Shown here: positions 30,633 through 64,000 of the stretch, piece by piece
How positions within the stretch are numbered: the first letter of the stretch is position 1
How the letters are laid out: each line of letters starts with the position of its first letter
Assembly: GCF_902459465.1 (NCBI RefSeq)
Contig: NC_047062.1
Coordinates: forward strand, 12,586,001-12,650,000
Reading direction: 5' to 3'
DNA: 64,000 bases
From: Asterias rubens
Taxonomy: Eukaryota
The notes under the pieces: model-generated
What the model was told of the DNA's origin: nothing
Database searches by the model: none
What the model saw: the letters and a program-made list of their open reading frames with translations, nothing else
Made by a program: the position numbers and the translations under genes

Positions 30633-30978
30633 AGACAGTGGACACTATTGGTAATTGTCAAAGACCAGTCCTCTCACTTGGTGTGTCTCAACATATGCAT
30701 AAAGTAAAAAAACCTGTGAAAATTTGAGCTCGATTGGTCGTCGGAGTTGCGAGATAACTATAAAAGAAGAAAAAAACACCTTTGTCACACGAAGTTGTGT
30801 GCTTTTAGATGCTTGATTTCTACCTCAAATTCTAAACCTGAGGTCTCGAAATCAAATTCGTGGAAAATTTCTTCTTACTCGAAAACTATGTCACTTCAGA
30901 GGGAGTCGTTTACTCGTCACCAAGTAAGGTTTTATGCTAATAATTATTTTGAGTAATTACCCATAGTGTCCACTGCCT
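30633..30978. mobile_element. Kolobok-type MITE
   Basis: TTAA|AGACAGTGGACACTATTGG...ATAGTGTCCACTGCCT|TTAA. Confidence 0.85.
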
Positions 30979-37234: not shown

Positions 37235-37952
37235 TGGCACGTTAAATTTGTAATTCGATAGTCGTTGGCGCGTTAAATTTGTAATTCGATAGTCGTTGGC
37301 ACGTTAAATTAATTCGATAGTCGTTGGCGCGTTAAATTTGTAATTCGATAGTCGTTGGCGCGTTAAATTTGTAATTCGATAGTCGTTGGCGCGTTAAATT
37401 TGTAATTCGATAGTCGTTGGCACGTTAAATTTGTAATTCGATAGTCGTTGGCATGTTAAATTTGTAATTCGATAGTCGTTGGCACGTTAAATTTGTAATT
37501 CGATAGTCGTTGGCACGTTAAATTTGTAATTCGATAGTCGTTGGCACGTTAAATTTGTAATTCGATAGTCGTTGGCACGTTAAATTTGTAATTCGATAGT
37601 CGTTGGCACGTTAAATTTGTAATTCGAAAGTCGTTGGCGCGTTAAATTTGTAATTCGATAGTCGTTGGCGCGTTAAATTTGTAATTCGATAGTCGTTGGC
37701 GCGTTAAATTTGTAATTCGATAGTCGTTGGCGCGTTAAATTTGTAATTCGATAGTCGTTGGCACGTTAAATTTGTAATTCGATAGTCGTTGGCACGTTAA
37801 ATTTGTAATTCGATAGTCGTTGGCACGTTAAATTTGTAATTCGATAGTCGTTGGCACGTTAAATTTGTAATTCGATAGTCGTTGGCACGTTAAATTTGTA
37901 ATTCGATAGTCGTTGGCACGTTAAATTTGTAATTCGATAGTCGTTAAATTTG
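37235..37952. repeat. Minisatellite, 31-bp unit, about 23 copies
   Basis: Unit CGTTAAATTTGTAATTCGATAGTCGTTGGC(A/G); only about 2 units at the paralogous site 55591-55650. Confidence 0.97.
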
Positions 37953-43785: not shown

Positions 43786-44542
43786 TAACGGAGGTAGGCA
43801 ATTAAAAAGAGGGCGCTTACAGAAGAAGTGTGTGCATAGTTTGCCGCATGAGTCCTCCGTTTATAACCAAATTTGACCTCCATTTAAACACATATTCCCC
43901 CGATGATCGAAATGTAATTTAATACAAGAACATCTACTCATATTAATGCAATTATGTTTGTGTTGTTAAACACACTATTTCACCCTTACCATTTATTTAT
44001 TTAAACTATACCAGACACCCCCACCCCCTTTAATAGGAAAAATGCGCTTTACAGACTAAATATGTAAAGTAAGAAGCCAATTAACATGCCGCTACATATT
44101 GTCAAAGTTATATTATATTAGAGTAAATAATATAGGCTAAGAGTTTGAAAGGGTGTCGGTTCCTTTTGTAGGTTTTTGAACATGACAAGAATCCCTAAAC
44201 TCATGGTAGATGTATGTAATATAACTTACCTGTAGATGTTTCAGCTTCTTGTGTCGTCAAGTTCTTTTAATAGAGAAAAAAAGGTGAAAATCAGGGAGTG
44301 ATGTTTTCAGGAGACTCTCGTTATGACACTACTGGTAAATACGTTGTACAAATTAGAATGATGTTCGTCTCCCGAGACGAACATTACTGTTGTGACATTA
44401 GTTTACTCATTTCTAAGAAACTACAGCACCTCAGCAAGAATTATTTTAAGCGGGTATATTTTGACCATCATTATCTTCAAACTGTGTAAACAAAATGTAA
44501 ACCTGCGGACATTATGTTTTGTGTCGTACAAAAAGCCTTTAT

Positions 44543-44895
44543 AGACACTGGACACTATTGGTAGTTGTCAAAGACCAGACTTCTCACTTGATGTATCTCA
44601 ACACATGCATAAAATAACAGACCTGAGAAGTTGCAAAATAACAATGAAAGAAAATAAAAACACTTGTCACACGAAGTTGTGTGCTTTCAGATGCTTGATT
44701 TCGAGACCTCAATTTCAGAATCTGAGGTCTCGAAATCATTTCTTGGAAATTTGCATCTTTCTCGAAAAGTACTCCTCTTCAGAGGGAGCCGTTTCTCATA
44801 ATGTTTTATACTACCAACCTCTCCAAATTACTCATTAACAAGTAAGTTTTATGCTGATAATTATTTTGAGTAGTTATCAATAGTGTCCACTGCCT
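44543..44895. mobile_element. Kolobok-type MITE downstream of the lipase stop codon (paralog 62176-62553)
   Basis: AGACACTGGACACTATTGG...GTGTCCACTGCCT|TTAA. Confidence 0.8.
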
Positions 44896-45022
44896 TTAAA
44901 CAATATCTGTTTATCAAACTTGCATAATAATAGAAACGTTTACGATTGCTGATCAAACAAAGATACTCAACCGAGTTCTGAGTAGTCTCTATACGAGAAA
45001 AAAGACAACTAATATATCAAAA

Positions 45023-47652
45023 CTACGGCATAAGGAATTTGTATCCGCAGTTGTTGGAATCCATCCTGATGACGAATCTTCCAGAGCCGTCTCCTTTCTC
45101 TGCATGGATGCCCATCCGGGGGCATGTCCCGCTGCAAGAGCGCTGCCAGATCCGTCTCTTGGTGGCGAAGGAACAGGTTCGGCCGGGCTGAATGTAGAAG
45201 TTCTTCATGCTGGATAAGTAGTAGTCAATTGCTCGCATGTGACTGCAGTGGACGGCCACACAGCTTGGTTGGGCGAGGTAGTCAGGGTTAGGATAAAAGT
45301 CTTGGTGACCCACCTGTGTCAGAGGTATTCATTCATATAATTAATTTAACACAAAGATTGGATGCCCAATATGCCAATTTACTTTTTAATTAGGGGTTCG
45401 AGCTTCAGCCGAGCACATCTTCTTTTGAGGCTATTTTTACGGGCTAAACAAAAACTTACCGGTTCAAGAAGTCCAAACAAATGCATGAGTCCATCCGTAT
45501 GGATGACGTCAACAAAGTCAGCGTCAGTTCTATCCAAATGGCAATCTGAAGTGCCGAGGTACAACCTGAAACCCGGTCTCGCAGGGTCGAGGCCTGTATA
45601 GGGTAAACTCACAGTTATAAATAGCCAAATAATAATTGCTATGTGTAAAAGTTTTGGTTGGCCGATCAATTTGACCCGAAATTTAAATAAATTTTTAAAA
45701 AACTGGCACATAATAGTTTTCACCATAGATAATTGTATCAACTTCGTTCCCATCGGTGTATAACCTTGCCTGGCCATGTTTTTTCTTTCCCAGATTGCCT
45801 TGCCCGATCGTAACCCACTGGAAGTGTGATTTGAAAGTATCGAAATATATTGAATGTTTAAAATAGTTTTTATCATCAATCCATAATGAGTAGTACGAAA
45901 AACGCGCGAGGTGCCGGGCTGGGGTTGCCTGTCCGATTCAGCTAAAACAATCGCGGTCTCAGCTAGATTTTAACTCAAGTCTAGATGTATACCTGAAATA
46001 CGCCCGATCTGTCCGTGTAAGAACATGCCAGTGTACCCTGCCAGATGGGCACCAAGGCTGTGCCCCAACATGTGGACGTCTTCGTACTGTAAACCTCGAC
46101 GCTCGTGCAACTCCTCCAGCAGTAAGGCAAGTTCCTTTGCAACCAGTACGATATCCATCACACTCTTTTGATAATGAAGGCGACTCCATCGGGACGATGG
46201 CCAACTCACCATGATGATGTTGTAGTTGTCCTGTATAATATGACAGTATTGTTTTATTAGTGTTATAAGATTTGGCCTGCTGGCGTATTTTTTCCCCAGA
46301 TGAGATGAGGCCACTTAGCATGCGACCATTAAATGGTAAGTGGCCTCATCTGTCCTGCCCAGGCCTGGGCAAAAAAATACGCGGCCTGCCGTATGTGATT
46401 CTATCTCAACGAAGTGTGACTGATGCAATCCTCAATATCCCCACCCCGGATTTACGCACACATTATCGTAAATACTCGTTACGCGCACGTTAGACGTGGA
46501 ATAAGATGCACTGTGGTTAAGCTATAAATGATCAAGTTTGATCGCTAGCTAGGCCAGCATGCACCCAAATCAACAGTAAGCGCTTGAGCAATGGAGTGCG
46601 AAAGGGTATTTGTATATTAGTGCGTATTGGCGACCCCAACCAGAAACTGTAGTCATCGGTTGAGCGTTTTCGCGTTTAAACCGCGATGGCGAGGCTGTTC
46701 AAACCAAACGGTAACCGACTCGTTTCTCGGTTGGGCTTGGTTGGGGTCGCCAAAACGCACTTCATACATCACTCGAACAACCAATGAGAACGCTGCGGAG
46801 GGTATCTAGACACATAAGTTATACATACCAATTTCATGAACGAATGACAGAGTGACATGAAGTATTTGTTCCGAACGCTTGTTTGCCAGCCATGGATTAT
46901 AACAATTGTTTTCTTGTAGCTGTGGAAACTATCGAATGTGTTGGGGTCGTCCCAGTATAACTTTTGTCGGTAATAGCAGCGTCTGTCACTATTATACTGA
47001 CGGGTGAACAGGTAGAACTCGTTGTTTATGTCTGACAGGTGAGCTGGATTCAACCCGGACCAACAAGAGAGGCTGGTATCAAAGCAGAAGCGGCCATAGG
47101 TATGGCGGACGCCCCGACTGTTATAACATCTGGCTAGAAATATATCATAATAAAGGAAGAACATTAAGTAGTGCGAAACAATGTTATTTCTTCTAATGAA
47201 ACATGACTCAATTGAATCAAAGGAGTCAGGTATGATGAGGGGCATTATATCACGCAATGTCTTTATGATGAGGGGCATAATGAGAATTGGGCAAAATGAA
47301 AATCGTATAACTGATCGAAGAAAAACAAATAAGAATCACAAAAAAATATAAACAAAGTCCGAGAGCTTTTTGATGGCGTGCTTCTTATCCAATATGGCGT
47401 AGGTTACATATTTATTTAGTATAGATCTTCCACATCCTTGCATACATGAAGAGCGCCCTTCTCAGAACACATGGCGAGCTCTATACCGGATTATAAGATT
47501 GTGGAATTAGAATTTCAAATTAGCAAAATTCCTCACAGTTATTATATGAGTAATTATTTGGAAATACAGTTCACTGTCTTACTCTGGTAGGATTCGTTGA
47601 CCATGAGTAGGAGTACCAGCGACCCAATCAGGATACGTGTTAGTTCAATCAT
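45023..47652 (-). CDS. Secreted pancreatic-lipase-family (alpha/beta hydrolase) protein, 5 coding exons, 345 aa, no C-terminal PLAT domain
   Basis: Exons 47652-47583 (signal peptide MIELTRILIGSLVLLLMVNESYQ), 47133-46829 (..IIHGW..), 46230-45993 (GHSLG nucleophile), 45593-45460 (LDPA acid, DVIHTD) and 45313-45023 (GHQDFYPN..QPSC..CSH catalytic His). Junctions are GT-AG with phases 1,0,1,0; total 1038 nt. Confidence 0.93.
46619..46762. mobile_element. Small MITE in a lipase intron
   Basis: TIR AGTGCGTATTGGCGACCCCAACC / GGTTGGGGTCGCCAAAACGCACT. Confidence 0.65.
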
Positions 47653-48880: not shown

Positions 48881-48891
48881 ATATTTGTTAA

Positions 48892-49262
48892 AGACGTTGG
48901 ACACTTTGGTAGTTGTCTAAGATCAGTCTTCTCACTTGGTGTATCTCAACATATGCATAAAAGAACAAATCTGTACTTTGAGCTCAATCGATCGTCGAAG
49001 TTGCAAGGTATTAATGAAAGAAAAAACACCCTTGTCACACGAAGTTGTGTGCTTTCTGATGCTTGATTCCGAGACCTCAAGTTCTAAATCTGAGGTCTCG
49101 AAATCAAATTCGTGGAAAACTACTTCTTTCTCGAAACTATGTTACTTCAGATGGAGCCGTTTCTCACAATGTTTAAACTATCAACAGCTCCCCATTACTT
49201 GTTACCAATTAAGGTTTTATGTAACAATTACGTTGAGTAAATTCAAATAGTGTCCAATACCT
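48892..49262. mobile_element. Kolobok-type MITE
   Basis: TTAA|AGACGTTGGACAC... matches the dominant family. Confidence 0.75.
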
Positions 49263-51269
49263 TCAAACTTTATGTTATGACGTCTTCGATGACCTCATCA
49301 TTACCAGAAAAAGTAGCATTTTCATTATAAGGTCTAAGAACACGTAAAGCTTCAAGTCTATTTTACAACCTTTCAAAAGTTTCTGGTAGAATAAGAAGAC
49401 ATGGTTATGGTTATGGCGCGATCAGAAATTGAAAGTACGCCTATACATCTTGCCATATTATTGGCATATTGCCCCGAGCCGGAACGAGCATGTTTGTGTG
49501 CTTTACATGGTGTTTCCTTAACAACTATCTTATTGAGCGAACTCTACACAGAAAAGTTCTTTGACTTGAGGAAATAAAAATACACATTTTGCCTGGTTGG
49601 AAATTTATCGAGGGTATCGAGAGATTGCATGGTGAAACAGAACGTCAGTAACAACGGAGGGACAAAAAGTACGTGTTATCACTATACGAACAATACACTT
49701 TCTGTTTTGCGAAGAAGACTTTTGTAAAGGAAACACCATAAGGCCTAGATACAAAGCACACAAACATGCTCTCTCTGAATAAGTCCATTAGGCCGTCCGC
49801 CATACCGCGGTGGTCTGAGAAACTCTCTCTCTCTAAGACATCTGTCTAGAGCAGCTGTCTTTACCTCATGCAAACTTATTTTCAGTGCACGAATGTTGTG
49901 TGTCAATCTGGCTTTCGGTCTTCCTCTTTCCGCACGACATGCTGCCCCGGGGTTTTGCAGCAAACAAACCCGACCCCAAAGCTCCCAGACACGAAACAGA
50001 CAAAACTCACGCTCGTCATTTTGGAAAAAGTCTGAGACAACAACAGACAAAAATAGTGAAGAAAAGGGGAACCAAAAATAAACCAAACCAGCGCCTCATG
50101 TGAGTTTAAAAGAGGAAAAAGAGATAGGCGCATGAGACGCTCATCAGTGTGCTCCAGGGGTGAGAGAGAAAAATAAAATGTGGACAAAATTAACACTACA
50201 TATATCTTGGTATAAGATATGCACTAACCCTAAAAGTCCGAAAACAATGCAAATAAGTTCAAGTAAAGATCTTTAATGGTCGTCAAATAGACAGATCTCA
50301 CCACTGCCACGGTTATAACGGCCCGCGAAAAAACGGAACTTGGTGCTAATTTTCGTACAATGTTTCCGATCGTCGTGATATTTTCCTGGCCCTTTTCTAT
50401 TGCATTTGTTTAATGACTGTGACTTTGGGCACCATTTTGTTACGACAGAAACTTAATGAGAATGTCGGCATTGTGAAGAGCCCGGAGCACCGAAAGAGGG
50501 CGTCCTTTTACGGCGTCTTTTGGTGGAAGGCTTGTTGTTGTTCAAATATAGAGCGAGGGTTCAAGGCTTTCAAAGTAATGACGTTAACACAAAGAACAAG
50601 CAGACCAAGTCTTGTGTAGAATGACACATTTATTCAAAAAACATTAGTAGTCCAACCCTGTTTCCTGCCATCAAGTCTGGTAGTACTGCATACTTGTACT
50701 TTTTGCATTTCCCCACCATCCCTTCCTACAATATTCTTGGTTATTCAAAGAGTCAACCCTTCATAAAGAGGGGGGGGGGTGTAATACTTCAACCTTCAAC
50801 GCGGTACCAGTCTCGCGTCCAGGAAGTGTTTGTTTGAAAATACAAGGCCAAGTTCTGTTTGTAACTTCCTCAGGAAGATGACGGGGGAAATCTCTTCATG
50901 TGCAACAACAACATACTGAAAAAACGAAAGAGGAAAAGGAAGAGGTCCCCAGATCGCTGGTTATAGTTCAACAACATAAAACAAAAGAGAACAATGGCTG
51001 AACGATTAAATGGTTCAGGGTGGAAAATGTGAGCAAATCCCGTGGGAGCTGTTAACAAAATGTTAGGACTAGCAAACGAAGGACATTAAAGGCATATTTA
51101 CACTCCGTGCCCTACTCACATAATGCCTATTTGTGGGGTACCTAAAAAAAAGCGAACATTGGTATCCTACAAGTAAATTGAAAGTGGACAATGTCCCACA
51201 AGGGATTTTTAAAGAAAAAGGACAGTTTAAGGACAGGGTACCTCTTGACGCCTCTCTTAATATGTTTGC

Positions 51270-51510: not shown

Positions 51511-54050
51511 GGCTGCTTGTGAGTCTAGCTAGTGTTCCTCACAATGCCAAGGGTTGGAGTATTCATTCAGAGGGGATCGATGCAACTTACAAACATTCTT
51601 GATTGTTGATTTAATTGATTCAATTAATTTGTTCGACTCTCGGTTATTACAACTTCATACGTATGGACGAGTTATGATGAACGAAAAGCAAACAAAGACA
51701 ACTTTGTTAACGCAAATCAGAACAACCATATTTTTAGACAGTATACTCAGTTTAAATTAAGTAAAGCTATCAAATTTAATCAATTACAATCCAAGTTGTG
51801 AAACAGAGTCCCATAATCTTTTATGAAAACTCATTATATGTTTATGAGAAACTGCGTCAAAGAAAGTCAACTATCTTGCCTAACACCAAAGTGGCAAGCA
51901 ATTACTATGTTCACTACGCCAAGCTGTAATTGGAACATATGGGTGTTAACATAAAGTATTGTAAAGGCAAGCCAATTTATTTTAAGACAATGACAAGTAA
52001 AATAACATCCATTTATGATTTAGATAATAAAGCAATAGACTCACCAGATCCACAACCAACTCCTTCAACCTTACCAAGTTGCACGAAGTACCAGTGGGAA
52101 ATGAAGGCACCCTGTGAGCAAACTGAAACCAAACTCAATGGAGACCACTCCGCACTGTTATCAGAAATATGCCTAGAAGGAACGCACTCTGTTCGCATAC
52201 ATAGTTCCATACGTCACAACACCTCATATACCGAAAATAATGCGCAAGACTTAACAAAAAAATAGCTTGTTTTTGTTGATCTTAGGAGTGGAGCTAAATA
52301 TAATTACATGAAGGCGACAAGTATTTCTTTAATTGTAGTTTAGTGACTATATACTAGCTAAAACCAGGGTAAAATAGAATAATCAAACTTTGAGTGGAAC
52401 TACAAAATTGTCGAATGGACACCAAAGTACGAGAGTGTGATTAGTCTGAACAACTACGTCATTGTATATTACAACGGGCTGAATATATTTTTAAAGGAAT
52501 TTCAAGCAAAGTCTGCGTAGGGCAATATCGGGTGTTCTGATGTAAGGTGTCTTTCAATTTGGCATTTTGGACCCGATTTGTGGTTTTTGAATAAAATAAA
52601 ACTTAACAAAATTGCAAACTGTGAAAGTTGGCTAATAAAGAAATAAAACAGTTTGTTTTGGTTTTGGTTTTTTATAAGTCAACACTCAGAAATTTGTTAA
52701 ATCTGATCTTTTGCACTTTTGCTAAATGGTGTACAATTTAGGATTCTACACAGGATTACTCAATAACTGACTCGTACAATTGTAGTTGTTACTATCTCGC
52801 ATTCCTTTTTTTATTCACGGTTATTGCCAAATAAAACCATGTAGTGAAATTATTTCACCTTTCTTAAAAGTCGTTCTCTCCCAATGACATGATGCACTAA
52901 CAGAATAATTTCAATTGGGGGGGGGGGGGCGGGCTAAATGGCAGCAGACCTACCAGTGGAAATGTGAACATGTCCAGCGACGTAACTTTTCGCAAATTCT
53001 CTGTACACGCGTCTTAGCCGTGAAATAAGGTGCATGCTGGTCTAGCTAGCTATCAAGCTTGGTCCCTATCTAGACCAGCATGTACCTCATTGCGCAATGG
53101 GTATTTCGACGGGTCTATGACAATTACTTTGGTCTGCTGCCACCTAGCGTTGAACAGACTCCCATTGCGTCAGGCCTACATAATATAATTCCTGATCGTA
53201 AAATTGTTGACTTGTTGGTTTTTCGATTTCCAAGTCGATCATTAAGTGTATCACGGTCAAAAAAATTGACACAATTTTCGCTATGCTTGATCTTTTCAAA
53301 ATGTCATGGACAGATCTATAATACTGATAACGATTCCTTTACTGATAACATTTACTTGTGGCATGCAGATTCATTCGCACCTGTAGTTTCTGTTTTAATG
53401 TAAACTAGTATTGTGTCCGTAGGTAAAAGAGTGAACAATTTCACTCTCTTCCGAGTTGTGTCAGTTTCGCTTTTTTGAGAGTGAAATCTGCACCACTCCT
53501 CTTCGTGAAAGTGGTATGAACTTCTCTCTAAATTGAGTTAAAAGTACCCGTTGTTCACTCTAAAAAATATTTGTATGTCATTATGGCTTTTTGCAACGGT
53601 GGTATGGCGGACCAAACGAGTAGTTTTCATTTTTACATTGAGAGAGATGGTAAGGACGCAATCCCACTATAGGTCACGCCCACCCCCTTTATTTAAACTG
53701 ACTCATCCACCGTTTACCAGAAGCAAATAGGGCAATGTATTTGTTTTTTGATGAATTTGCACATCATTGCCTATTTCCAAATTTCCACTTAATTGCTGAA
53801 CTTTATTTAACCCCCCAAAATTCCCCCACATTAATGTAATAAGTGTGCGTCCTAATAACAAACTTTATTTCATTCCTTTAACATAATTAAATTCTCAGTA
53901 AAATACCATCACCAAAATAAGCCCAATACACTTTAGAGGAGAATTTGTGCCCCCTTAAATTCGGTAGTAAGGGCAGAGGCTAAGTGTAGGGATACTTGGG
54001 TATTTCTTCCTCTTTTTTTGTTTTTTGTTAATAACCCATCCAAACGTCTC

Positions 54051-54338
54051 CTAGACAATGTATGCACATCCGCAGTTACTTGATGTCATCGTGATGCTAA
54101 AACTTCCAGAGCCATCTCCTGTCTTAGCATGGATGCCCATCCGGGGACATGTACCGCTGCACGTCGTCCCGCAGCACGCTTCAGTGACGAAGGAACAGGG
54201 TTGGCCGGGCTGAATGTCGAAGTTCTTTATGCTGGATAAGTAGAAGTCATATGCCCGCATGTGACTGCAAGCGACCTTCCACAAACACTTTGGTTGCATA
54301 AAGGTTCCTTTGTTCGGATAAAAGTCTTGGTGACCCAA
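54051..54338 (-). pseudogene. Isolated terminal exon of a second lipase paralog (intact frame, acceptor and stop); upstream exons not found in the window
   Basis: TTCTTTTTACAG|LGHQDFYPNKGTFMQPKCLWKVACSHMRAYDFYLSSIKNFDIQPGQPCSF...CPRMGIHAKTGDGSGSFSITMTSSNCGCAYIV*; same exon boundary and phase as 45313. Confidence 0.75.
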
Positions 54339-54648
54339 CTGTAAAAAGAAGGAACATTGATTAGAGGTCCGGTCACACAGGCCCCGATAACGAGTACGAA
54401 AACGAGAACGATAAAAATGCACGCCCTCGATTGGTTGAACGAGCGTGGACGTATTCTGCGTGGAGCATTTCAACAATCGAGTGCTTGCATTTTTATCGGT
54501 TTCGTTGTCGTTCTCGTTTAGTGGGGTTGTGGCGGGAATTCTGTCCCCCTGGAGATCAGTGCCGGGTACCAGGGAATTCTGTCTGCCGGAAATTCAGTCC
54601 TTCTCATTGGAAATTAACGTAGGGGTCGGATTAACGTAGGTGTAAGAG

Positions 54649-54872
54649 GAGGATTCAAAAGAGGGCGCTATCAGGAGAAGTTTGTACACAGTTTTAACTT
54701 AGGCCGTGTCCGAAACGACGACTTCGGCTACAGCTACGTCTAGATCAGCGCGTCTACCAGTGTTGAAGAATAGCAGACGCGCGCGATCTAGCCGTAGCTG
54801 TAGCCGAAGTCGCCGTTTCGGACACGGCCTCAGTACAAACTTCTTCTACAGCGCCCTCTTTTGAATCCTCCT
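54649..54872. mobile_element. Nested inverted-repeat structure: Harbinger-like MITE (54701-54830) inside an outer inverted repeat
   Basis: Inner TIR AGGCCGTGTCCGAAAC; outer arms AGGAGGATTCAAAAGAGGGCGCT..GAAGTTTGTAC / GTACAAACTTC..AGCGCCCTCTTTTGAATCCTCCT. Confidence 0.65.
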
Positions 54873-55334
54873 CCTCCAATGTTAATGGGGGACCGAATCT
54901 CCGGCGGGCCTGGACACGGGCATCAACCGAATTCCTCATCTTGTTGTTATTGATTGGGGGTTTGGGGGGGGGGGGGGTTGAAAGCTCAAGACTCATTTTG
55001 ATGTTAAGTCTGGCTTTTTAAGTATCTCCTTTATGTTCATCTGTGTTCCTTTTTATGCTTGTCGGGCCTTTTAAAATCTAGTTGTTCATTGGTTTGTACT
55101 TTCTTATGTGCTTTTTTATATACACTTTTTTTAATTTCTCGGATTTAGGAGACATACGCCTTTCGGCGATAGTTATTTTGTTTTTACTTTTGTTTAGTTT
55201 TTAAAAGCTCTACTTGGTATCCCGCTGTTGTTTTACTTTGTTTGTTTTAAATATTGTTTTATAAGTATACTTCACGCACTTGTAAAATAATGTGTTTATT
55301 GGGGCGGTTGAAACAAGGTTTACCGGTTCCTCTA

Positions 55335-58300
55335 CCGACAATGGCGGTCAGGCAGTCCAAAAAGAACACATTACAAGTAAAGCTGGCACATAAAGGAACA
55401 ACAAAATATACAAATAACTACACCAAATAATATAGAAAAACGTGCAACGATATTGTATAGTTGGCTGTGGGGTTTGTGTGGGGAAGGGTCAAAACCAGGG
55501 ACGCCTACCCGATTCGACGTCATTACGTAATGCTTGAGGTAATTGGGACCGTAAAATCGGATACCGTGGGCTTATCACACAATTTTTCATAATTTGTAAT
55601 TCGATAGTCGTTGGCACGTTAAATTTGTAATTCGATGGTCGTTAAATTTGAGTGACTATACCTGGTGTACGTTTCCAAACTTTAGTTTGAATGAATGTTT
55701 GCAGTCAATACAAATATGGCATGGCATGGCACTTTGGTTGGTAACTTTATTGTGGTGAGCCTAATGTTGTGCTTTAGCTGCTTGTTTGTGCTGAAGCACC
55801 TTCAAAGAGTCAGGACCTCTAGTTACACCTTGCTCCGTGAATACACCTTGCTTATGTTAGTTGCCATTGAACGATAAACAGGTATATCAGTAGTGAGAAT
55901 TACTCTTTAATTGAGTGAAGTAATGATATTGAAATGTTGATTATCATTCGTGAATTGGCTATAGCAGGTATACCGATCGATTGGTTCTTAATGACCGTGC
56001 TTATTTGATACGTGTATTTAAAACATACTTTTAGAGGGGTTGGGGGGGGGGGTAAATGACGGACTCCCGATTTATAAAGTCATCAGACACAGGTGTCTTC
56101 AAATTTGACGAAAGGTACAACTTAACCCATTCTTCGTACAATATGCGCATACAATTTGATTTAAAATTAATGACACAATTCTTCGTATGCCTAATACGTT
56201 CTTAGAGTCTTTTTCGGAAACTCTCGAAAATTATGCTATTTTGAACTCAAGTTCTGATGACTTATATTGACTATGTAGTTCGAAACATATTATCTAGATA
56301 TAGTCATAATATTATTACAAACTGTTGAAATATAGTATGGTTGCAAATGAATGATCGCATTGAAAGCTTAAAACAACGAGAGTAACGTTCACATTGTAAC
56401 TATTTGATCAGAACCAATAATACTTACCAACTGACACGCACCACTATGTTTAACATGACATTGTTGCCAAAAGACGTTCCGTAATATGTTTTTAATTTAA
56501 CTTAAAGGATGTCGCAGCACAATCGAAATTTTGTGGTCAAAAGGTAAATTCGAAAATATGTTCAGAGATGTTTACATAATATAGCTAAGGTATTATGGAG
56601 CCCCTCTGAGAAAGGTTAACAACAATCTAAACTGTACAATTCAAAATATTTTGTGTCCTCAAAATATTGTTTCGTAACCTCGAAATATAATTTCGTTTCC
56701 CCGAAATCATTTCATAACAAGAGTTCACAATGTGTTTCATTTGACATTTAGACACGCCGAAATATAGCCTGATCTGTATATTTTAAAAATACTTGTTGTT
56801 TTAAACAATATGACGTTCCGAGGCTTCCATAGTTTAATTCGAACCAACGAATATTTGAGTTTTCTGCATTGTCATATTGCTCCAACAGACGCGGGTATTC
56901 CATATTATTATTATGATTTTGTTGATGAAGTCGTTGTTTTAGAGGTTGCCGGGCACATATGGGATTTAATATTATAATATGTATTTTTTTTTATAGGGGT
57001 TTGCATTTGATGAAACAAGCTTTGAATAGGGCACGCGCAGAAAATATAACTAGGAAGATTATGTGCATTACACATCCAAGGGAAAATACTAAAATTGATC
57101 ATGATACCGAGGATTGCGTTGCCAAGCAACATTGGGCCACAACGCGTCCGCACCCAAGTAACGAGCACCGACAACGGCCGCATCCTTAGACGTTGCCATT
57201 ATAATACTAAAGTAATTATATCAACCATAACAAAAATCATACTGACCTTAAAATATGGAGCGAACACAATGAATGAAATATACATCTTGAAGAAATGTAT
57301 ATACCCATTCACCCTTTCATCATCCGTAAAGGGGAGGTTTATTTAATTTTCTTTTGAAATTTTTTTTTGGGGGGGGGGTTGCGGGGAGGGTGCTTGTTTT
57401 CTTTCATGTTAAAGGAATACGTTGCCTTAGATCGGTCGAGTTGTTCTTTGAAAAGCGTTTGTAACCGTTTGTTATAAAATGCATAATGGTTAGAAAGATG
57501 TTCTCAAAGTATAGAATACAACGATTCACACAAACATGCCTCGAAATTGCATGGTTTTCCTAACATTGCATTTTATAACAAACGGTTACAAAGGCTTTTT
57601 AAAGACCAACTCGTCCGATTGTCCCTTTAATCTATGGTCTACTCATGCCCTAGACGTTAAGGACAAAATAGTTATACTATGTCACATACTGGCTTTCATC
57701 GTTATTTCTGCGAAGGTTTCCCAACCGTTTTAGGTCGTGCCAGATATATAGCCCGCTATTTGTTTGATATAAAGACAATTCAAGAGACTTTTGTGTGAAG
57801 TTTGTTGTTGATAGAATGATCAAAACATGGTGCATAGATAAACATTAATGCTCCCATACCCAACCTCTAAAAGGCCTCTCCAATCTACATTAGGCTTATG
57901 TGCTTTTTGCTAAAACAGAGTACGTTTCCCCTCGTCGAATTTTATGTAAAATTAATGTGTGCTTGTAAAACTAGCTACATTTTGTGGATTCCGAAGTACT
58001 TTCTCCATTGAACCACAATCTTCTTTTAGCGAGTCCAAGGCCCCCTCCTTGTCATTCTGTTTCCATCGATTTACTCGCATGGTTTAATCTAATTGTGATA
58101 ATTAGCGAGGCAAATCAACAATTCTTTTCACACGCACACAAGTTAGAATGTATAACGCCTCCCTGTTTGAATAATGTATACCTACTCACAAGCACTGTAA
58201 CAACGGGGTATACCCCCAAACAGATTCACACAAAGACCTCTGATTTTAACTTAAGTTTCATCATTTTGGTCTTTTTTTTTTCTTTCTTTTTTCCACCTTC

Positions 58301-61300
58301 TTCTTCCCTTTTGTCATATTATACTGTTGGTCCTAATGGCTTCTATTCGGGGAGCAATTCAAATAGAAATAAAGCAGAAAAAAGTCACAAAAGTTATCAT
58401 AGTATAAAACTGATTTTTCTCCTTTACCAGAGGTTGGTTTAAAGGGGGGGGGGGGCGTTTAAATGACTCATGGGAAATTACTTATTCCCATCATCACTTA
58501 AGTATTTTTTTCTGATATACAAAATCTTGCGTTCGGCCGTGGAACAACACCAAGTTGTATTATGAAACTCAAAAAGTGAGGCAAATAAGGGGAAATGTTT
58601 GATATACATTTGATGTAAGTTAAATTAAGTTTCTTGTTATTATCCTAATGTTTTCTTTCTAGACAAATCTGCAATGGACCTGTACTCAACTATCTCATGG
58701 CATTCTAACTATAGAACTGTTAATCAGAGACCTTAAGTTCCCCAATTTATTTAAAGTGATACATACACCAAGCAAAACACCGTCGCACACCGGAGTAGTA
58801 GGCCCACTGTGCTTCTGTTCTGTTTTTAATAATCTGTTCTCTCGTTGCCTGGTTTATGACAAGGCAGGATGTTTAATCTGTATCAATATTAATAGCAGTC
58901 CCTCCCTTGGAGCAACCCTCCCTGGCTGCAGTTGGACTTTAGGCCAATAATGATTGATTCTGAACCCTAAAAACCTGCAATTCTGTGCAGCGTGAAAGTT
59001 ATCGACTACATCAGATTTGTCACGTGCTTTTAAACAACGGCTTCCTAAAGCGCAGTATTCGTTTTTTTTTTTATCGTGCACACGAAGCACGCCCTCTGCC
59101 GCCCGAGACGCAAAGTCGCAACACTAAACCGTGTGCCAACTTCAGTTTGAGGCATGATCCCATCACATAACTTCTATTATAAATGAGGATACAAACAAAA
59201 CTCAGCAGAACGATTCATTCCTTTTTGCCTGTACCTTGGTCTATCCCTGGCCGATCAAGTTTAAAATCAGGCAACTTTCAACTCAACAATGTCTTTGAGC
59301 TACCGCGTTATTGCCTACTGTGTTAATTTGGCCAGCTGCATGTACCTCTGCACTACTCGTATAAATTTAATACAGCACAGCTATTTCACGCACTTGTCAC
59401 TTCGTATGTCTTAAAACATGTGTGGTTGTGTGCTCAATTCGGTACAATCAGGTCACAAGAAAACCTAAAATAAAAGGTTTCCAAGTGGACAAATCTGAAG
59501 ACTACATTGGATGCTCCAAATGGAAATTTGTGTACAAAGTACACACATGTGTATATGGGAAAATGTTAAGTACATGGACAATAGGAAGGTTCAAAGACAT
59601 TTCCTCGGGGTGCACTTAGACCGTGAGTGTCTATACTGTCTAGTGAAACCGAGTGGGGAATTTACCCAACATGGATCCGGTTTATCTTACGGATTGGGTC
59701 CTTGCTGCGCTTTCGCGTACAAATTAGGACGTCGCTTCAAAAATGACCAAACAACATTCTTAAACAAGAATCGGAACTCAAAGAGAAGTCCTTGGTTTAC
59801 AGCTTGTTAAAACATGTGTGATTTATTTTTAAAATCGAGTGTTACTGGGTACAAAACGATGTGATACTTCTTGTGACAAATTAGAGGAACACGTTGCCTT
59901 GGATCGGACGAGTTGGTCTATTAAAAGCGTTTAAAACCGTTTGTTATGAAATGTATATGGTTGGAAAGATGTTGTAAAAGTACAATATACTGATCCACAC
60001 AAGTATCACTCAAAATTGCACGGTTTTCCTTTTACGTCGCGAACTATCACGGTCGGCCATTTATGGGAGTCAAAATGTTGACTCCCGAAATGACCGACCG
60101 TGTTAGTCGACAAGGTAAAAAGAAAACCACGCAATTTCGAGGCATATTTGTGTAGATCATTGTAACCTACTTTTACAATATCTTTCTAACAATATGCATT
60201 TTAAGTAGGATTTGAAACTTTGCATGGTGGAGATAAGATATAGAGGAGTTTGCGGTAACACCATGTAATAATCTCTAAATGAGTTGGGGTGGTTCTGAAA
60301 AAAACCGTTGGTTTAACTCGACGTTTCGATCAGTATGCTCTGATCGTCTTCTGGAGAGTATGCATTTTATAACAAACGGTTACAGAACGCTTTTCAAAGA
60401 CCAACTCGACCGATGCAAGGCAACGTGTTGCTTAGTAAAATCTGTTAACCCGATTCCTATAATTCGAGATTGAATTTCTTTGAAAAATTTAGTTTTTAAT
60501 TTTCGGGCCCTCAATGGTTTAGCCCCTGGATACATTTGTTCTTCATTCATTCCCCTCTGCCTGGTTCACGATCATCGAGACTCTCAAAACGTCCTTGAGC
60601 CTCGTTCCCACTAAAGAAATTTGGTGTTAGAGGGCGTATGCTACTTGTTTGTAGAATTCATTATACATTTTGCATCATTATAATACAAGCTTAATAGAAA
60701 CCTTTAAAACTCAATTCAATACTGCCTATTATTGTCTTTTCTTTTGTTTAATGTTCTCTTGCGTCATACTCTTGAAGGTGCCATGATAACAACTGTCAGG
60801 GGGAGACAAATTCATGCATTACAAGTTTTGTTTTTAAATAACTTCGAAGTTAACAAAAACAAATTGACAGAGTGTAATTTGAACCAAAAATCTCCGGTTT
60901 ATAGGCACTGGCGTTTAGTTATTGTCAAAGACCAGTATTCTCACTTGGTGTATCCAAACACATGCATTAAAACGAATCTGCCAAATTTGACTCAATATTG
61001 ATCATCGAAGTTGCAAGAGAATAGTAAAAGAACAAACGCCATTGTTGCAAAAGTTTGTGTGCATTAAAATGCTTATTTAAATGCTTCAGGCCTGAACTCC
61101 TCTATTTTTAAGTGAGAAATAACTTCTTTCTCAAAAATTGTATCTTCAGAAGGGAGCCGTTTCTAAAAGAATCAACAGCTCTCCATTGCTCGTTACCGCG
61201 AATAAGTTTTGTTGTTAACAATTGTTTTGAGTAGTTACTACTAATAGTGTCCAGTGCCTTTAACGTGATGGTGTCTTATGGAAATCTGTACGCCGGGGAT

Positions 61301-64000
61301 AGTTCCCCCACCGTACACTAAAGCCCGGTTCATACTTCCTGCGAATGCGAATGCGAAGCGACTTTGACGTAACTTTGACATTCGTATCGCATTCGCAGGA
61401 AGTATGAACCGGGCTTAACGGAGGTAGGCAATTAAAAAGAGGGCGCTTACAGAAGAAGTGTGTGCATAGTTTGCCGTATGAGTCCTCCGTTTACAACCAA
61501 ATTTGACCTCCATTTAAACACATATTCCCCCGATGATCGAAATGTAATTTAATCCAAGACCATCTACTCATATTAATGCAATTATGTTTGCGTTGTTAAA
61601 CACACTATTTCACCCTTATCATTTATTTATTTAAACTATACCAGACACCCTCACCCCCTTTTACAGGGAAAAATGCGCTTTACAGACTAAATATGTAAAG
61701 TAAGAAGCCAATTAACATGCCGCTAAATATTGTCAAAGTTATATTATATTAGAGTAAATAATATAGGCTAAGAGTTTGAAAGGGTGTCGGTTCCTTTTGT
61801 AGGTTTTTGAACATGACAGGGATCCCTAAACTCATGGTAGACGTATGTAAAACTTACCTGTAGATGTTTCACCTTCTTGTGTCGTCAAGTTTTTTAGAGA
61901 AAAAAAGGTGAAAATCAGGGAGTGATGTTTTCAGGAGACTCTCTTTATGACACTACTGGTAAATACGTTGTACAAATTAGAATGATGTTTGTCTCCTGAG
62001 ACGAACATTACTTTCGTGACATTGTTTTACTCATTTCTCAGAAACTACAGCACCTCAGCAAGAATTTTTTTAAGCGGGTATATTTTGACCATCATTATCT
62101 TCAAACTGTGTAAAAAAAATGTAAACCTGCGGACATTATGTTTTGTGTCGTACAAAAAGTACACAAAACCTTTATAGACACTGGACACTATTGGTAGTTG
62201 TCAAAGACCAGTCTTCTCACTTGATGTATCTCAACACATGCATAAAATAACAGACCTGAGAAAATTTGATCTCAATCGGTCGTCAAAGTTGCAAAATAAC
62301 AATGAAAGAAAATAAAAACACTTGTCACACGAAGTTGTGTGCTTTCAGATGCTTGATTTCGAGACCTCAATTTCAGAATCTGAGGTCTCGAAATCATTTC
62401 GTGGAAAATTACATCTTTCTCGAAAAGTACTCCTCTTCAGAGGGAGCCGTTTCTCATAATGTTTTATACTACCAACCTCTCCAAATTACTCGTTAACAAG
62501 TAAGTTTTATGCTAATAATTATTTTGAGTAGTTATCAATAGTGTCCACTGCCTTTAAACAATATCTGTTTATCAAACTTGCAGAATAATAGAAACGTTTC
62601 GATTGCTGATCAAACAAAGATACTCAACCGAGTTCTGAGTAGGTCTCTATACGAGAAAAAAGACAACTAATATATCAAAACTACGGCATAAGGAAGCCGT
62701 ATCCGCAGTTGTTGGAATCCATCCTGATGAAGAATCTTCCGGAGCCGTCTCGTTTCTCTGCATGGATGCCCATCCGGGGGCATGTCCCGCTGCAATAGGG
62801 CGGCCAGATCCGAGTCAGGGTGGCGAAGGAACAGGTTCGGCCGGGCTGAATGTAGAAGTTCTTCATGCTGGATAAGTAGTAGTCAATTGCTCGCATGTGA
62901 CTGCAGTGGACGACAAACGTACAGCCTGGTTGGTCGAGGTCGCCATGGTTAGGATAAAAGTCTTGGTGACCCACCTGTGTCAGAGGTATTCATTCATATC
63001 ATTAATTTAACACAAAGATTAGGTGCACAAAATGCCATTTTACTTTTTAATTAGGGGTTCGAGCTTCAGCCGAACACATCTTCTTTTGAGGCTATTTTTT
63101 CGGGCTAAACAAAAACTTACCGGTTCATAAAGTCCGAACAGATGGACGGGTCCATCCGTATGGATGACGTCAACAAAGTCAGCGTCAGTTCTATCCAAAT
63201 GGCAATCTGAAGTGCCGAGGTACTCCCTGAAACCCGGTCTCGCAGGGTCGAGGCCTGTATAGGGTAAACTCACAATTATAAAGAGCCAAATAATAACTGC
63301 TATGTGTAAAATTTTTGGTTGGCCGATCAGTTTGACCCGAAATTTAAATAAATTTAAAAATAAGGCACATACTAGTTTTTACCATTGATAATTATATCAA
63401 CTTCGTTCTCATCGGTGTATAACCTTGCCTGGCCATGTTTTTTCTTTCCCAGAGTGCCTTGCCCGATCGTAACCCACTGGAAGTGTGATTTGAAAGTATC
63501 GAAATATATTGAATGTTTAAAATAGTTTTTATCATCAATCCATAATGTGTAGTACGCAAAACGCGCGAGGTGCCGGGCTGGGGTTGCCTGTCCGATTCAG
63601 CTAAAACAATCGCGGTCTCAGCTAGATTTTAACTCAAGTCTAGATGTATACCTGAAATACGCCCGATCTGTCCGTGTAAAAACATGCCAGTGTACCCTGC
63701 CAGATGGGCACCAAGGCTGTGCCCCAACATGTGGACGTCTTCGTACTGTAAACCTCGACGCTCGTGCAACTCCTCCAGCAGTAAGGCAAGTTCCTTTGCA
63801 ACCAGTACGATATCCATCACACTCTTTTGATAATGAAGGCGACTCCATCGGGACGATGGCCAACTCACCATGATGATGTTGTAGTTGTCCTGTATAATAT
63901 GACAGTATTGTTTTATTAGTGTTATAAGATTTGGCCTGCTGGCGTATTTTTTCCCCAGATGAGATGAGGCCACTTAGCATGCGACCATTAAATGGTAAGT
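55335..64000 (+). repeat. Segmental duplication copy 2 (runs off the right edge)
   Basis: Matches 37060-46340. Confidence 0.95.
62681..63889 (-). CDS. Duplicate lipase gene, last three coding exons (5' exons beyond the right edge)
   Basis: Exons 63889-63652 (GHSLG), 63254-63121 (LDPA, IHTD) and 62974-62681 (GHQDFYPN..CSH..stop); splice sites and frame intact. Confidence 0.92.

What the first reader, a model, noticed from the sequence alone, without database searches (positions are those of the whole stretch)
45023..45593. Hypervariable substrate-loop exons between two otherwise near-identical lipase copies
Hand alignment of copy 1 with copy 2 (62681-63889). The serine exon (238 nt) has 1 silent change and 0 replacements. 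The LDPA/beta9 exon (134 nt) has 4 replacements (L/E, L/P, M/V, L/Y) and 2 silent changes. The terminal exon (291 versus 294 nt) has 15 replacements plus a one-codon insertion in the lid and only 1 silent change. Many are multi-nucleotide and radical (AAG/CTG, AGA/ACT, AAA/GGC, QRS/PPY). They cluster at the beta9 loop, the pre-lid/lid (PDYLAQPSCVAVHC versus HGDLDQPGCTFVVHC) and one later segment (TKRRIWQRS versus TLTRIWPPY), while catalytic residues and cysteines are invariant. This is the pattern expected of diversifying selection on substrate or target recognition, as in toxin or immune-effector families. Caveat: the two adjacent introns are also more diverged than distant flanks (8 changes in the 145-nt intron), so the region is a local divergence island, compatible with gene conversion elsewhere or old balanced alleles.
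Basis: partly seen in the sequence, partly recalled or inferred. Interest (0 to 1): 0.8.

Follow-up and report, generated by a model that had tools for sequence, protein, structure and literature searches.

The report
Diverged active-site loops in duplicated starfish lipases
Two neighbouring copies of a secreted lipase gene in the common starfish are kept almost identical by copy-correction, except for a 0.8-kb stretch and a few other codons that encode the loops around the active site, where one copy has changed fast; this is a real but familiar kind of gene-family evolution.

Summary
The window is Asterias rubens LR699092.1 (12,586,001-12,650,000). It holds two tandem paralogues, c1 and c2, of a secreted, PLAT-less, mini-lid member of the pancreatic-lipase family. 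They lie in a 26-28 kb tandem repeat that differs by about 1.9%.

- **Island.** The 5' half of the gene is homogenised (introns 1+2: 1 difference in 1047 bp). A 0.76-kb tract (45038-45795) differs by 6.9%, introns included. That equals the divergence from the A. amurensis orthologues, so the tract has escaped gene conversion.
- **Asymmetry.** Inside the island, introns changed equally on both lineages (11:11). Exons changed almost only in c1 (22:3, p=0.009).
- **Where the replacements fall.** They sit in the beta9 loop, pre-lid/lid and a flexible loop. Exon 2, in otherwise homogenised DNA, also has six differences, all replacements, two of them in the beta5 loop (p=0.0007).
- **Adjacent double changes.** These are enriched in exons (p=4e-7).
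- **Limits.** Pairwise dN/dS (1.7; terminal exon 2.9) is not significant on its own.
- **Other individuals.** Their contigs are block mosaics of the two types.

Verdict: selection maintains loop differences against concerted evolution, and only one copy is accelerated. This is a new member of a known kind, of moderate interest.

The parts
45023..47652 (-). Lipase copy 1 (c1). It has 5 coding exons: 47652-47583, 47133-46829, 46230-45993, 45593-45460 and 45313-45023 (stop included). Product is 345 aa = XP_033639482.1 (P0002).
   Evidence: The exon set was solved so that the translation equals P0002. Pfam PF00151. AF2 model pLDDT 84.6. Best fold match is 1gpl/PLRP2/PL.
62681..64000 (-). Lipase copy 2 (c2), 3' part inside the window. 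Terminal exon 62681-62974, beta9 exon 63121-63254, Ser exon 63652-63889. Exons 1-2 lie beyond the window end (window-equivalent 64488-65311).
   Evidence: Alignment to c1. The full intact 346-aa ORF was read from locus L001, which is identical to the window where they overlap.
45038..45795 (.). Divergence island between c1 and c2. It runs from the middle of intron 3 through the beta9 exon, intron 4 and the terminal exon, almost to the stop codon. Divergence is 6.9%, against about 1.9% for the unit and 0.1-0.7% for the 5' half of the gene.
   Evidence: Polarisation with three A. amurensis orthologues. Distances.
45460..45593 (-). beta9-loop exon of c1. Four replacements against c2 (residues 215, 240, 241, 247), derived in c1 at three of them; residue 241 differs from the A. 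amurensis state in both copies. Loop hydropathy rises from -0.06 to +0.45.
   Evidence: Loop assigned by alignment to human pancreatic lipase 1lpa_B.
45023..45313 (-). Terminal exon of c1. It encodes the pre-lid (259-266), a mini-lid of 4 residues between C267 and C272 (5 residues in c2), catalytic H274, a variable basic loop (301-308, pLDDT <50) and the C-terminus.
46829..47133 (-). Exon 2 of c1, which includes the beta5 loop (residues 105-114). It has six nucleotide differences from c2, all replacements (5 residues, 2 in the beta5 loop). The flanking introns 1+2 have 1 difference in 1047 bp.
   Evidence: A third beta5-loop type is seen in contig L009.
37058..55297 (.). Tandem repeat unit 1. 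It contains the truncated 267-type fragment, c1 and c1's 8-kb downstream region. It is homologous to unit 2 (55334 to window-equivalent 83977).
   Evidence: Self-BLAST of the window and of the merged loci L006+L001.
55334..64000 (.). Tandem repeat unit 2, the part inside the window (downstream region and 3' part of c2).
52545..55297 (-). Truncated copy of the upstream paralogue (267-type, XP_033640276.1). Only part of the last intron, the terminal exon (54054-54338, open, acceptor intact) and 1.5 kb of downstream DNA remain. Exons 1-4 are absent (one deletion).
   Evidence: The exon differs from the P0267 exon by 8/288 nt, the same as its flanks (2.7%).

Best explanation
Two real tandem paralogues of a secreted lipase evolve in concert by gene conversion. 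The enzyme is a catalytic-domain-only, mini-lid member of the pancreatic-lipase family, most likely a phospholipase A1/galactolipase-type enzyme. Conversion keeps most of the 26-28 kb repeat unit at about 2% divergence and the 5' half of the gene at about 0.1-0.7%.

The last 0.76 kb of the gene has not been homogenised. It still carries a divergence as old as the split from A. amurensis. Within it, copy 2 has stayed close to the A. amurensis state under purifying selection. Copy 1 has fixed about 20 replacements at or above the neutral rate. These lie in the beta9 loop, the pre-lid/lid and a flexible loop. They make the loops more hydrophobic and the protein more cationic.

A few replacement differences in the beta5 loop and the N-terminal region persist as islands one or two codons wide inside freshly homogenised DNA.

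The best reading is that selection favours, and protects from conversion, functional differences between the two copies in the loops that govern substrate and interface recognition. That is neo- or sub-functionalisation of copy 1.

**Shown:** the duplication, the concerted evolution, the island, the lineage asymmetry and the loop location.
**Inferred:** that selection rather than chance keeps the differences, and that they alter substrate or interface preference.
For: **Family and fold.** PF00151. Best sequence and fold matches are the guinea-pig PLRP2 chimera 1gpl, other PLRP2s, pancreatic lipase, LPL and hornet PLA1. The triad S183/D207/H274 and all Cys are conserved. There is no PLAT domain.

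**Concerted evolution.** In the Ser-exon region c1-c2 differ by 0.7% against about 4% between species. In the island introns c1-c2 differ by 6.3%, between species 6.2-7.4%, and A. amurensis paralogues 5.6%.

**Island.** p=8e-13.

**Lineage asymmetry.** Derived changes in exons are 22 (c1) against 3 (c2). In introns they are 11 against 11 (p=0.009).
- c2 replacements against neutral sites: OR 0.22, p=0.03.
- c1 replacements against neutral sites: OR 2.0, p=0.075.
- c1 at codons not conserved in the family: OR 2.6, p=0.009.
- c1 changes avoid family-conserved codons (p about 0.05).

**Exon 2.** Six differences, all replacements, against 1 in 1047 intron bp (p=0.0007).

**Adjacent double changes.** 15/34 in exons against 18/233 in noncoding DNA (p=4e-7).

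**Loop enrichment.** p=0.006.

**Charge.** +7 (c1) against +1 (c2).

**Neutral control.** The orphan exon has the same divergence as its flanks.

**Real array.** The A. amurensis array has alternating 267-type and c-type genes. Its unit boundary lies within 130 bp of the A. rubens one.

**Literature.** The lid, beta5 and beta9 loops determine substrate specificity in this family (PMC9031518, PMC8287333).
Against: - Pairwise N against S tests are not significant (p=0.27-0.36). Only 4-5 silent changes exist.
- No codon site or branch-site model could be run.
- c1-derived changes are GC-to-AT biased (11:3). They include a replacement of a Gly conserved in at least 90% of 85 family members (G260D). 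Both fit relaxed constraint.
- Two tandem changes (GA>TT, GC>AA) resemble the error-prone-polymerase signature that I recall from the literature. Such changes are known to inflate dN/dS.
- Distances of the variable residues to the active site could not be measured, because no model coordinates were available. One cluster lies in a segment with pLDDT <50.
- There are no expression data for either copy.
- The mosaic contigs could be assembler chimeras.
Confidence: 0.6

Rival explanations
1. Relaxed constraint. After duplication, copy 1 became redundant in its 3' part. Its changes are neutral drift plus multinucleotide mutations in a tract that conversion happened not to reach, and they have no adaptive meaning.
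For: - Exon divergence in the island (7.1%) is about the same as intron divergence (6.3%).
- Pairwise omega is not significantly above 1.
- Only c1 is accelerated.
- The derived changes are GC-to-AT biased, and a conserved Gly at residue 260 is lost.
- Many changes are tandem changes.
Against: - Tandem changes are about 6-fold enriched in exons against noncoding DNA of the same unit (p=4e-7). A mutational process should not distinguish the two.
- c1 replacements avoid family-conserved codons (p about 0.05). At non-conserved codons they exceed the neutral rate (OR 2.6, p=0.009).
- Exon 2 keeps six differences, all replacements, inside homogenised DNA (p=0.0007).
- The ORF, splice sites, triad and all Cys are intact.
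- The changes show a directional shift in charge and hydropathy.
Confidence: 0.2
2. Assembly artefact. The two 'copies' are the two haplotypes of one locus placed in tandem (a false duplication). The island would then be a pair of old, possibly balanced, alleles.
For: - The repeat is a perfect head-to-tail tandem, with only 37 bp between the units.
- Mean divergence of about 1.9% is within the allelic range for many marine invertebrates (my general knowledge).
- Contigs from other individuals are recombinant mosaics of the two types.
- NCBI's 'isoform X1' model (P0265) chains both copies.
Against: - A. amurensis, an independent assembly, has the same alternating array of 267-type and c-type genes.
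- In three A. amurensis loci the homology of the c-type downstream region ends at window-equivalent 36928. That is 130 bp from the A. rubens unit end at 37058. An arbitrary haplotig overlap would not end there.
- Contigs from other samples carry only 2-4 private differences per about 3 kb (0.07-0.12%), against 1.9% between c1 and c2. So c1 and c2 are not two random alleles.
- There is no gap or N at the junction.
Confidence: 0.1
3. Imported tract. The island in copy 1 was pasted in by gene conversion from an unsampled, more diverged paralogue, or by introgression from another Asterias species.
For: - The island has sharp boundaries, at mid-intron 3 and about 15 bp before the stop.
- Divergence inside the island equals the between-species level.
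- Block exchange clearly occurs at this locus.
Against: - No donor was found. The protein collection holds only c1, the chimeric X1 model, the 267-type gene and a distant paralogue for A. rubens.
- c1-derived states match neither the 267-type genes nor any A. amurensis copy.
- Intron changes are symmetric (11:11) while exon changes are not (22:3). A simple import would not produce this.
- The A. rubens genome itself could not be searched at the DNA level with these tools.
Confidence: 0.1

Closest known systems
Guinea-pig pancreatic lipase-related protein 2 (PDB 1gpl; 'a pancreatic lipase with phospholipase A1 activity')
   Same: It is the best sequence and fold match (E=2e-40; TM 0.74). The catalytic triad and disulfide pattern of the N-terminal domain are the same. 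It has a mini-lid of about 5 residues between the two lid cysteines, like c2 (5) and c1 (4).
   Different: The starfish proteins have no C-terminal PLAT/colipase-binding domain and end at 345-346 aa. Their beta9 loop is 4 residues shorter than in pancreatic lipase. Identity is only about 31%. Their activity is untested.
Extracellular PLA1 members of the pancreatic-lipase family (PS-PLA1, mPA-PLA1, vespid venom PLA1 such as PDB 4qnn)
   Same: These have short lids and short beta9 loops, which in this family go with phospholipase A1 rather than triglyceride lipase activity (PMC9031518). Vespid PLA1 is likewise catalytic-domain-only, and matches with TM 0.75 normalised to the target.
   Different: Sequence identity is 22% to 4qnn. 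No evidence here places the starfish genes in a venom or signalling role. Orthology to any of these proteins is not shown.
Tandem multigene families under concerted evolution with conversion-resistant, selected segments (the general model known from MHC, immunoglobulin V genes and venom phospholipases; my general knowledge)
   Same: Paralogues within a species are more alike than orthologues, except in a short functional segment. That segment carries excess replacement changes and recurrent changes at the same codons. Block mosaics occur among individuals.
   Different: There are only two copies in A. rubens. The acceleration is confined to one copy. Formal proof of omega above 1 is lacking. 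No link to immunity or envenomation is shown.
PLRP2-like secreted lipases of other sea stars (Acanthaster spine secretome, PMC10448888; Acanthaster homologue P0013)
   Same: They are secreted, PLAT-less members of the pancreatic-lipase family in Asteroidea. P0013 is 38-40% identical to c1 and has the same cysteine framework.
   Different: It is not shown that P0013 is the spine-secreted protein of that paper. Tissue expression of the Asterias genes is unknown.

Membership tests
Pancreatic lipase family (Pfam PF00151, alpha/beta-hydrolase lipases) | Significant match to the PF00151 profile | tested here: met
   Exon-level hits E=2.9e-18 (Ser exon ORF), 8.6e-9 and 8.4e-6 (terminal exons) and 5.7e-8 (beta9 ORF). 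The full protein P0002 carries precomputed PF00151.
Pancreatic lipase family (Pfam PF00151, alpha/beta-hydrolase lipases) | Ser-Asp-His catalytic triad with a GXSXG nucleophile elbow | tested here: met
   S183 (in GHSLG), D207 and H274 align with the Ser/Asp/His columns of 1lpa_B and 1gpl. These columns are invariant in 85 family members. They are identical in c1 and c2.
Pancreatic lipase family (Pfam PF00151, alpha/beta-hydrolase lipases) | Fold of the N-terminal catalytic domain | tested here: met
   AF2 model pLDDT 84.6, pTM 0.86. Foldseek top hits are 1gpl, 2oxe, 1hpl and 1lpa, with E down to 2e-26 and TM 0.72-0.74.
Classical pancreatic lipase / PLRP1-2 (vertebrate) | C-terminal PLAT (colipase-binding) domain | tested here: not met
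   The protein ends at residue 345/346, shortly after the catalytic domain. There is no PF01477 hit, whereas vertebrate hits carry it. The database name 'PLRP2-like' is therefore a resemblance, not membership.
Classical pancreatic lipase / PLRP1-2 (vertebrate) | Full-length lid of about 23 residues between the lid cysteines | tested here: not met
   There are 4 (c1) or 5 (c2) residues between C267 and C272/273. HMMER alignments to 1lpa_B and 1bu8 open an 18-19-residue gap there. 1gpl, which has a lid deletion, aligns without that gap.
Extracellular phospholipase A1 subgroup of the lipase family | Short lid and shortened beta9 loop | tested here: met
   Mini-lid as above. The beta9 loop is 4 residues shorter than in pancreatic lipase. 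The criterion is taken from PMC9031518.
Extracellular phospholipase A1 subgroup of the lipase family | sn-1 phospholipase activity | not testable with these tools
   There are no biochemical data. This is inferred from loop lengths only.
Tandem paralogues under concerted evolution (interlocus gene conversion) | Paralogues within a species are more similar than orthologues between species | tested here: met
   In the Ser-exon region c1-c2 differ by 0.7% and between species by 3.7-4.2%. A270-A151 differ by 0%. In the island this relation is lost.
Tandem paralogues under concerted evolution (interlocus gene conversion) | Mosaic tracts with switches between paralogue types | tested here: inconclusive
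   L007, L010, P0280 and P0281 are block mosaics with 2-4 private SNPs. L010 has fewer switches than random bubble-popping would give (p=0.013), and most switch intervals are below k=141. However, these are short-read metagenome assemblies, so chimeras cannot be excluded.
Gene families under diversifying (positive) selection, as in toxin or immune effector families | dN/dS significantly above 1 at a class of sites or on a branch | tested here: inconclusive
   Pairwise omega is 1.7 (terminal exon 2.9) and not significant. Against intron and silent sites the c1 branch gives OR 2.0, p=0.075, or OR 2.6, p=0.009 at non-conserved codons. Between-species omega is 1.4-2.3 in exons 1-3. No likelihood codon model was available.
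Gene families under diversifying (positive) selection, as in toxin or immune effector families | Recurrent replacement at the same codons in independent lineages | tested here: met
   Codons 241, 268, 269, 308 and 341 differ among c1, c2, the A. amurensis copies and the 267-type genes. The beta5 loop has at least 5 distinct versions.
Gene families under diversifying (positive) selection, as in toxin or immune effector families | Expression in venom, defence or immune tissue | not testable with these tools
   No expression data were accessible. Only a lead exists: a PLRP2-like protein is found in the Acanthaster spine secretome (PMC10448888).

The most novel reading that the evidence does not exclude
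The locus may act as a small cassette-exchange system. Short-tract gene conversion would shuffle alternative versions of the three active-site loops (beta5, beta9, lid/terminal exon) between tandem lipase copies. Selection would keep the alternative cassettes for as long as the species has existed. A. rubens populations would then carry a combinatorial repertoire of secreted lipase/PLA1 variants, as immune or venom families do. The orphan, still-open terminal exon (54054-54338) could be a further cassette or an alternative 3' exon.
Probability: 0.2. Interest if true: 0.65.

Novelty: new member of a known kind. Interest (0 to 1): 0.4.

Why it matters
This is a clean natural example, in an echinoderm, of selection on enzyme specificity loops working against concerted evolution. 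Two copies are kept nearly identical except in the three loops that decide what pancreatic-lipase-family enzymes hydrolyse.

It flags a fast-evolving, secreted, mini-lid lipase family in Asterias, with omega near or above 1 between species. Its biology (digestion, defence or surface chemistry) is unknown.

It also exposes an annotation problem. RefSeq merges the two paralogues into one gene with a chimeric 'isoform', and the true copy-2 protein is missing from the protein databases.

It does not open a new kind of mechanism.

Tried and rejected
1. A protein search with the terminal-exon ORF (96 aa) found nothing, because no such fragments are called in the collection. Population data for that exon therefore came from only two contigs.
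2. A scan of JGI metagenome contigs with a 30-mer of the terminal exon gave no match.
3. Two ENA contigs (P0272, P0274) could not be fetched because the sample files were too large. L008 and L009 do not reach the island.
4. Gene conversion from the 267-type paralogue or from the orphan exon as donor was rejected. They are 77% identical to both copies, and c1-derived states never match them.
5. P0265 ('isoform X1') was first taken as evidence of a mosaic third copy. This was rejected: its gene model spans 20.3 kb from the c2 start to the c1 stop. No canonical GT-AG path reproduces it.
6. Measuring distances of variable residues to Ser183 was not possible, because the structure tool returns no coordinates. 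Loop assignment rests on alignments only.
7. Likelihood codon models (codeml/MEME) and GENECONV are not installed. I used counting methods, and the cap on scripts was reached.
8. Random bubble-popping as the explanation for the mosaic contigs was judged unlikely but not excluded.

Full report
**1. Identity of the window and the genes**

- The window is eukaryotic: 38% GC, no N, GT-AG introns.
- The Ser-exon ORF found a 345-aa protein, P0002. [quoted passage not shown]
- Locus L001, fetched for a cluster mate, is base-for-base identical to the reverse complement of window 35023-64000. The window is therefore LR699092.1:12,586,001-12,650,000.
- Copy 1 (c1) has five coding exons on the minus strand: 47652-47583, 47133-46829, 46230-45993, 45593-45460 and 45313-45023. 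Joined as they stand, they translate exactly to P0002.
- Copy 2 (c2) is cut by the window end. L001 shows it is an intact 346-aa gene.
- The real c2 protein is not in the protein collection. Instead RefSeq has 'isoform X1' (P0265). Its model runs 20.3 kb, from the c2 start codon to the c1 stop. It combines c2 exons 1-4 and the c2 lid with the c1 tail. I found no canonical splice path for it.

**2. The observation**

  - Ser exon: 1 silent change, 0 replacements.
  - beta9 exon: 4 replacements, 2 silent.
  - Terminal exon: 15 replacements, one extra codon, 1 silent.
  - 146-nt intron: 8 changes.
- Nei-Gojobori omega is 0.78 for the beta9 exon, 2.9 for the terminal exon and 1.7 for both.
- With only about 4 silent changes this is not significant (p=0.27-0.36).

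**3. The duplication**

- c1 and c2 sit in a head-to-tail tandem repeat. Window-equivalent 83977-55334 matches 55297-37058, about 26 kb alignable with several large indels.
- The repeat starts inside the last intron of an older upstream paralogue, the '267-type' gene XP_033640276.1 (P0267).
- That is why an orphan terminal exon lies at 54054-54338. It is 60% identical in protein to c1/c2 and 95% to P0267.
- Mismatch-only divergence along the unit averages about 1.9%.

**4. The island**

- From 45038 to 45795 there are 52 mismatches in 758 bp (6.9%). This is the broadest peak in the unit (p=8e-13).
- It covers the 3' half of intron 3, the beta9 exon, intron 4 and the terminal exon. It stops about 15 bp before the stop codon.
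- Introns inside it differ by 6.3% and exons by 7.1%.
- Immediately upstream the copies are almost identical. There are 3 differences in 541 bp at 45801-46341, and 1 difference in 1047 bp of introns 1+2.

**5. Comparison with Asterias amurensis**

- A. amurensis has an array on CP134952.1 (24.21-24.43 Mb) in which 267-type and c-type genes alternate.
- I extracted and verified the CDS of three c-type genes (P0152, P0270, P0151) and two 267-type genes.
- Distances:

| Region | c1-c2 | Between species | A. amurensis paralogues |
|---|---|---|---|
| Ser-exon region | 0.7% | 3.7-4.2% | 2.9% (0% for A270-A151) |
| Island introns | 6.3% | 6.2-7.4% | 5.6-6.2% (1.1% for A270-A151) |

- So the copies evolve in concert outside the island. 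Inside it they have been separate for about as long as the species.
- The array is shared, not an assembly artefact.
  - In three A. amurensis loci the c-type downstream region runs to window-equivalent 36928 before the next 267-type gene. The A. rubens unit ends at 37058, 130 bp away.
  - The downstream region of P0270 is colinear with that of c1.

**6. Who changed**

- I polarised each c1/c2 difference with the three A. amurensis sequences.
  - Island introns: 11 changes derived in c1, 11 in c2.
  - Island exons: 22 derived in c1, 3 in c2 (Fisher p=0.009).
- Neutral sites here mean island introns plus silent sites.
  - c2 replacements run at about one fifth of the neutral rate (OR 0.22, p=0.03).
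  - c1 replacements run at about twice the neutral rate (OR 2.0, p=0.075).
  - c1 at codons not conserved across 85 family members: OR 2.6, p=0.009.
- c1 replacements hit only one of 35 family-conserved codons (G260D; p about 0.05).
- At five codons (241, 268, 269, 308, 341) c1, c2 and the A. amurensis copies all differ from one another.

**7.

- Exon 2 has six nucleotide differences, all replacements, giving 5 residue changes. Two of them (V110Y, K113R) lie in the beta5 loop.
- The flanking introns have 1 difference in 1047 bp (p=0.0007). Escape from conversion cannot explain differences one or two codons wide.
- Adjacent double differences make up 15 of 34 exonic mismatches, against 18 of 233 noncoding ones (p=4e-7). 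In the island introns the figure is 2 of 21 (p=0.008). A purely mutational origin of the multi-nucleotide changes would not single out exons.
- The orphan exon is a useful neutral control. It differs from its parent by 8/288 nt, the same as its flanks (2.7%).
- The whole family is fast-evolving. Between species omega is 1.4-2.3 in exons 1-3 and 0.65-0.94 in exons 4-5. Even against the 267-type gene omega is about 0.55.

**8. Structure and placement of the sites**

- The AF2 model of c1 has mean pLDDT 84.6. Residues 289-307 fall below 50.
- Best matches by sequence and fold are the guinea-pig PLRP2 chimera 1gpl, other PLRP2s, pancreatic lipase, LPL and hornet venom PLA1.
- By alignment to 1lpa_B and 1gpl:
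  - the triad is S183/D207/H274;
  - the beta5 loop is about residues 105-114;
  - the beta9 loop is about 236-251, four residues shorter than in pancreatic lipase;
  - the lid is only 4 residues in c1 and 5 in c2, between C267 and C272/273.
- There is no PLAT domain.
- Reviews state that these three loops cover the active site and determine lipase versus PLA1 specificity. They also state that guinea-pig PLRP2 is the PLRP2 with a lid deletion (PMC9031518, PMC8287333).
- Seven of the 25 replacements, plus the indel, lie in these about 30 loop residues (p=0.006). Five more lie in the pre-lid (259-266) and five in the low-confidence loop 301-308.
- The c1 changes are directional.
  - beta9-loop hydropathy rises from -0.06 to +0.45.
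  - Net charge of the mature protein is +7 in c1, +1 in c2 and -5 to -1 in A. amurensis.
- I could not compute distances, because no coordinates are exposed.

**9. Other individuals**

- ENA metagenome assemblies contain A. rubens-like contigs of this gene.
- L007 (2.9 kb) is c2-type at 39 sites. Its terminal exon is c1-type at all 21 sites. It has 2 private differences.
- L010 (3.3 kb) has the c2-type beta9 and terminal exons, flanked by c1-type intron 3 and 3' flank. It has 4 private differences.
- P0280 and P0281 mix the beta9-exon variants.
- L009 carries a third beta5-loop version.
- These data confirm that both sequence types are real.
- The blocks suggest ongoing short-tract exchange.
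  - Switches are fewer than random bubble-popping would give (p=0.013).
  - Most switch intervals are below the assembler's k of 141.
  - Assembler chimeras between paralogues still cannot be excluded.
- The very low private variation (about 0.1%) against the 1.9% c1-c2 divergence argues that c1 and c2 are not simply two alleles.

**10. Interpretation**

- The best-supported account has two parts.
  - Concerted evolution of real tandem paralogues.
  - Selection that creates and protects differences in the active-site loops, with copy 1 as the diverging partner.
- Rivals are:
  - relaxed constraint with multinucleotide mutation;
  - a false duplication of haplotypes;
  - import from an unsampled donor.
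- Points that keep the first rival alive:
  - the GC-to-AT bias of c1 changes (11:3);
  - the loss of a conserved Gly;
  - the non-significant pairwise omega;
  - two tandem changes with a signature I recall for error-prone polymerases.
- No evidence ties the genes to toxin or immune roles. The only lead is a PLRP2-like protein in the Acanthaster spine secretome (PMC10448888).

**11. Verdict**

- The selective reading is plausible and strengthened by new tests, but not proven.
- It also needs two amendments: escape from gene conversion, and one-sided acceleration.
- It is a new example of a known evolutionary pattern in a known enzyme family.

Noticed in passing
window 54054-54338 (-), within fragment 52545-55297: An orphan, still-open terminal exon with an intact acceptor. 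It is a duplicate of the last exon of the upstream 267-type lipase gene (XP_033640276.1). The rest of that gene copy is missing. The exon lies between c2 and c1 on the same strand, so it could in principle be an alternative 3' exon. Its divergence equals that of its flanks (2.7%), which fits a neutral relic.
   Followed up: partly
L001 10001-30289 (window-equivalent 65311-45023): RefSeq/Gnomon merges the two paralogues into one gene. 'Isoform X1' (XP_033639474.1, P0265) is a chimera of c2 exons 1-4 and the c2 lid with the c1 tail of the terminal exon. No canonical GT-AG junction reproduces it. The true c2 protein is absent from the protein collection.
   Followed up: partly
window 46857-46887 (exon 2, beta5 loop); locus L009: A contig from another sample carries a third version of the beta5 loop. 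It has five private nucleotide differences within 31 bp, in a contig with only 16 private differences in 2.3 kb. Some of its states are shared with A. amurensis paralogues.
   Followed up: partly
window 2372-2757, 20568-21331, 28545-28895, 30626-30915, 31565-32332, 44539-44901, 48888-49268, 62170-62558: A family of interspersed repeats about 380 bp long, 78-91% identical, occurs in both orientations. Two loci are inverted pairs, which looks MITE-like. One copy sits about 120 bp downstream of the stop codon of each lipase copy. Copies also occur in the A. amurensis loci.
   Followed up: no
window 37235-37945: A 31-bp-period minisatellite lies just inside the distal end of repeat unit 1. It is much shorter or absent at the matching place of unit 2 (55509-55591).
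   Followed up: no
window 12036-13574 and 5375-7682: A 42-bp-period minisatellite spans about 1.5 kb, with copies about 95% identical. Separately, a 1155-bp segment is present as two adjacent copies at 99.4% identity.
   Followed up: no
whole CDS of c-type genes (c1, c2, A. amurensis P0152/P0270/P0151): Between species the N-terminal three exons show dN above dS (omega 1.4-2.3), with variable patches beside the beta5 loop and after the 'VSW' strand. The 267-type paralogues are strongly acidic (net charge -19 to -22), while c1 is +7.
   Followed up: partly
A. amurensis loci L003/L004 (P0270, P0151): Two c-type genes about 55-60 kb apart are 0-1.3% diverged in the compared region. The P0151 model carries a 70-residue N-terminal extension. 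This could be a recent duplication, strong conversion or an assembly or annotation artefact in that genome.
   Followed up: no
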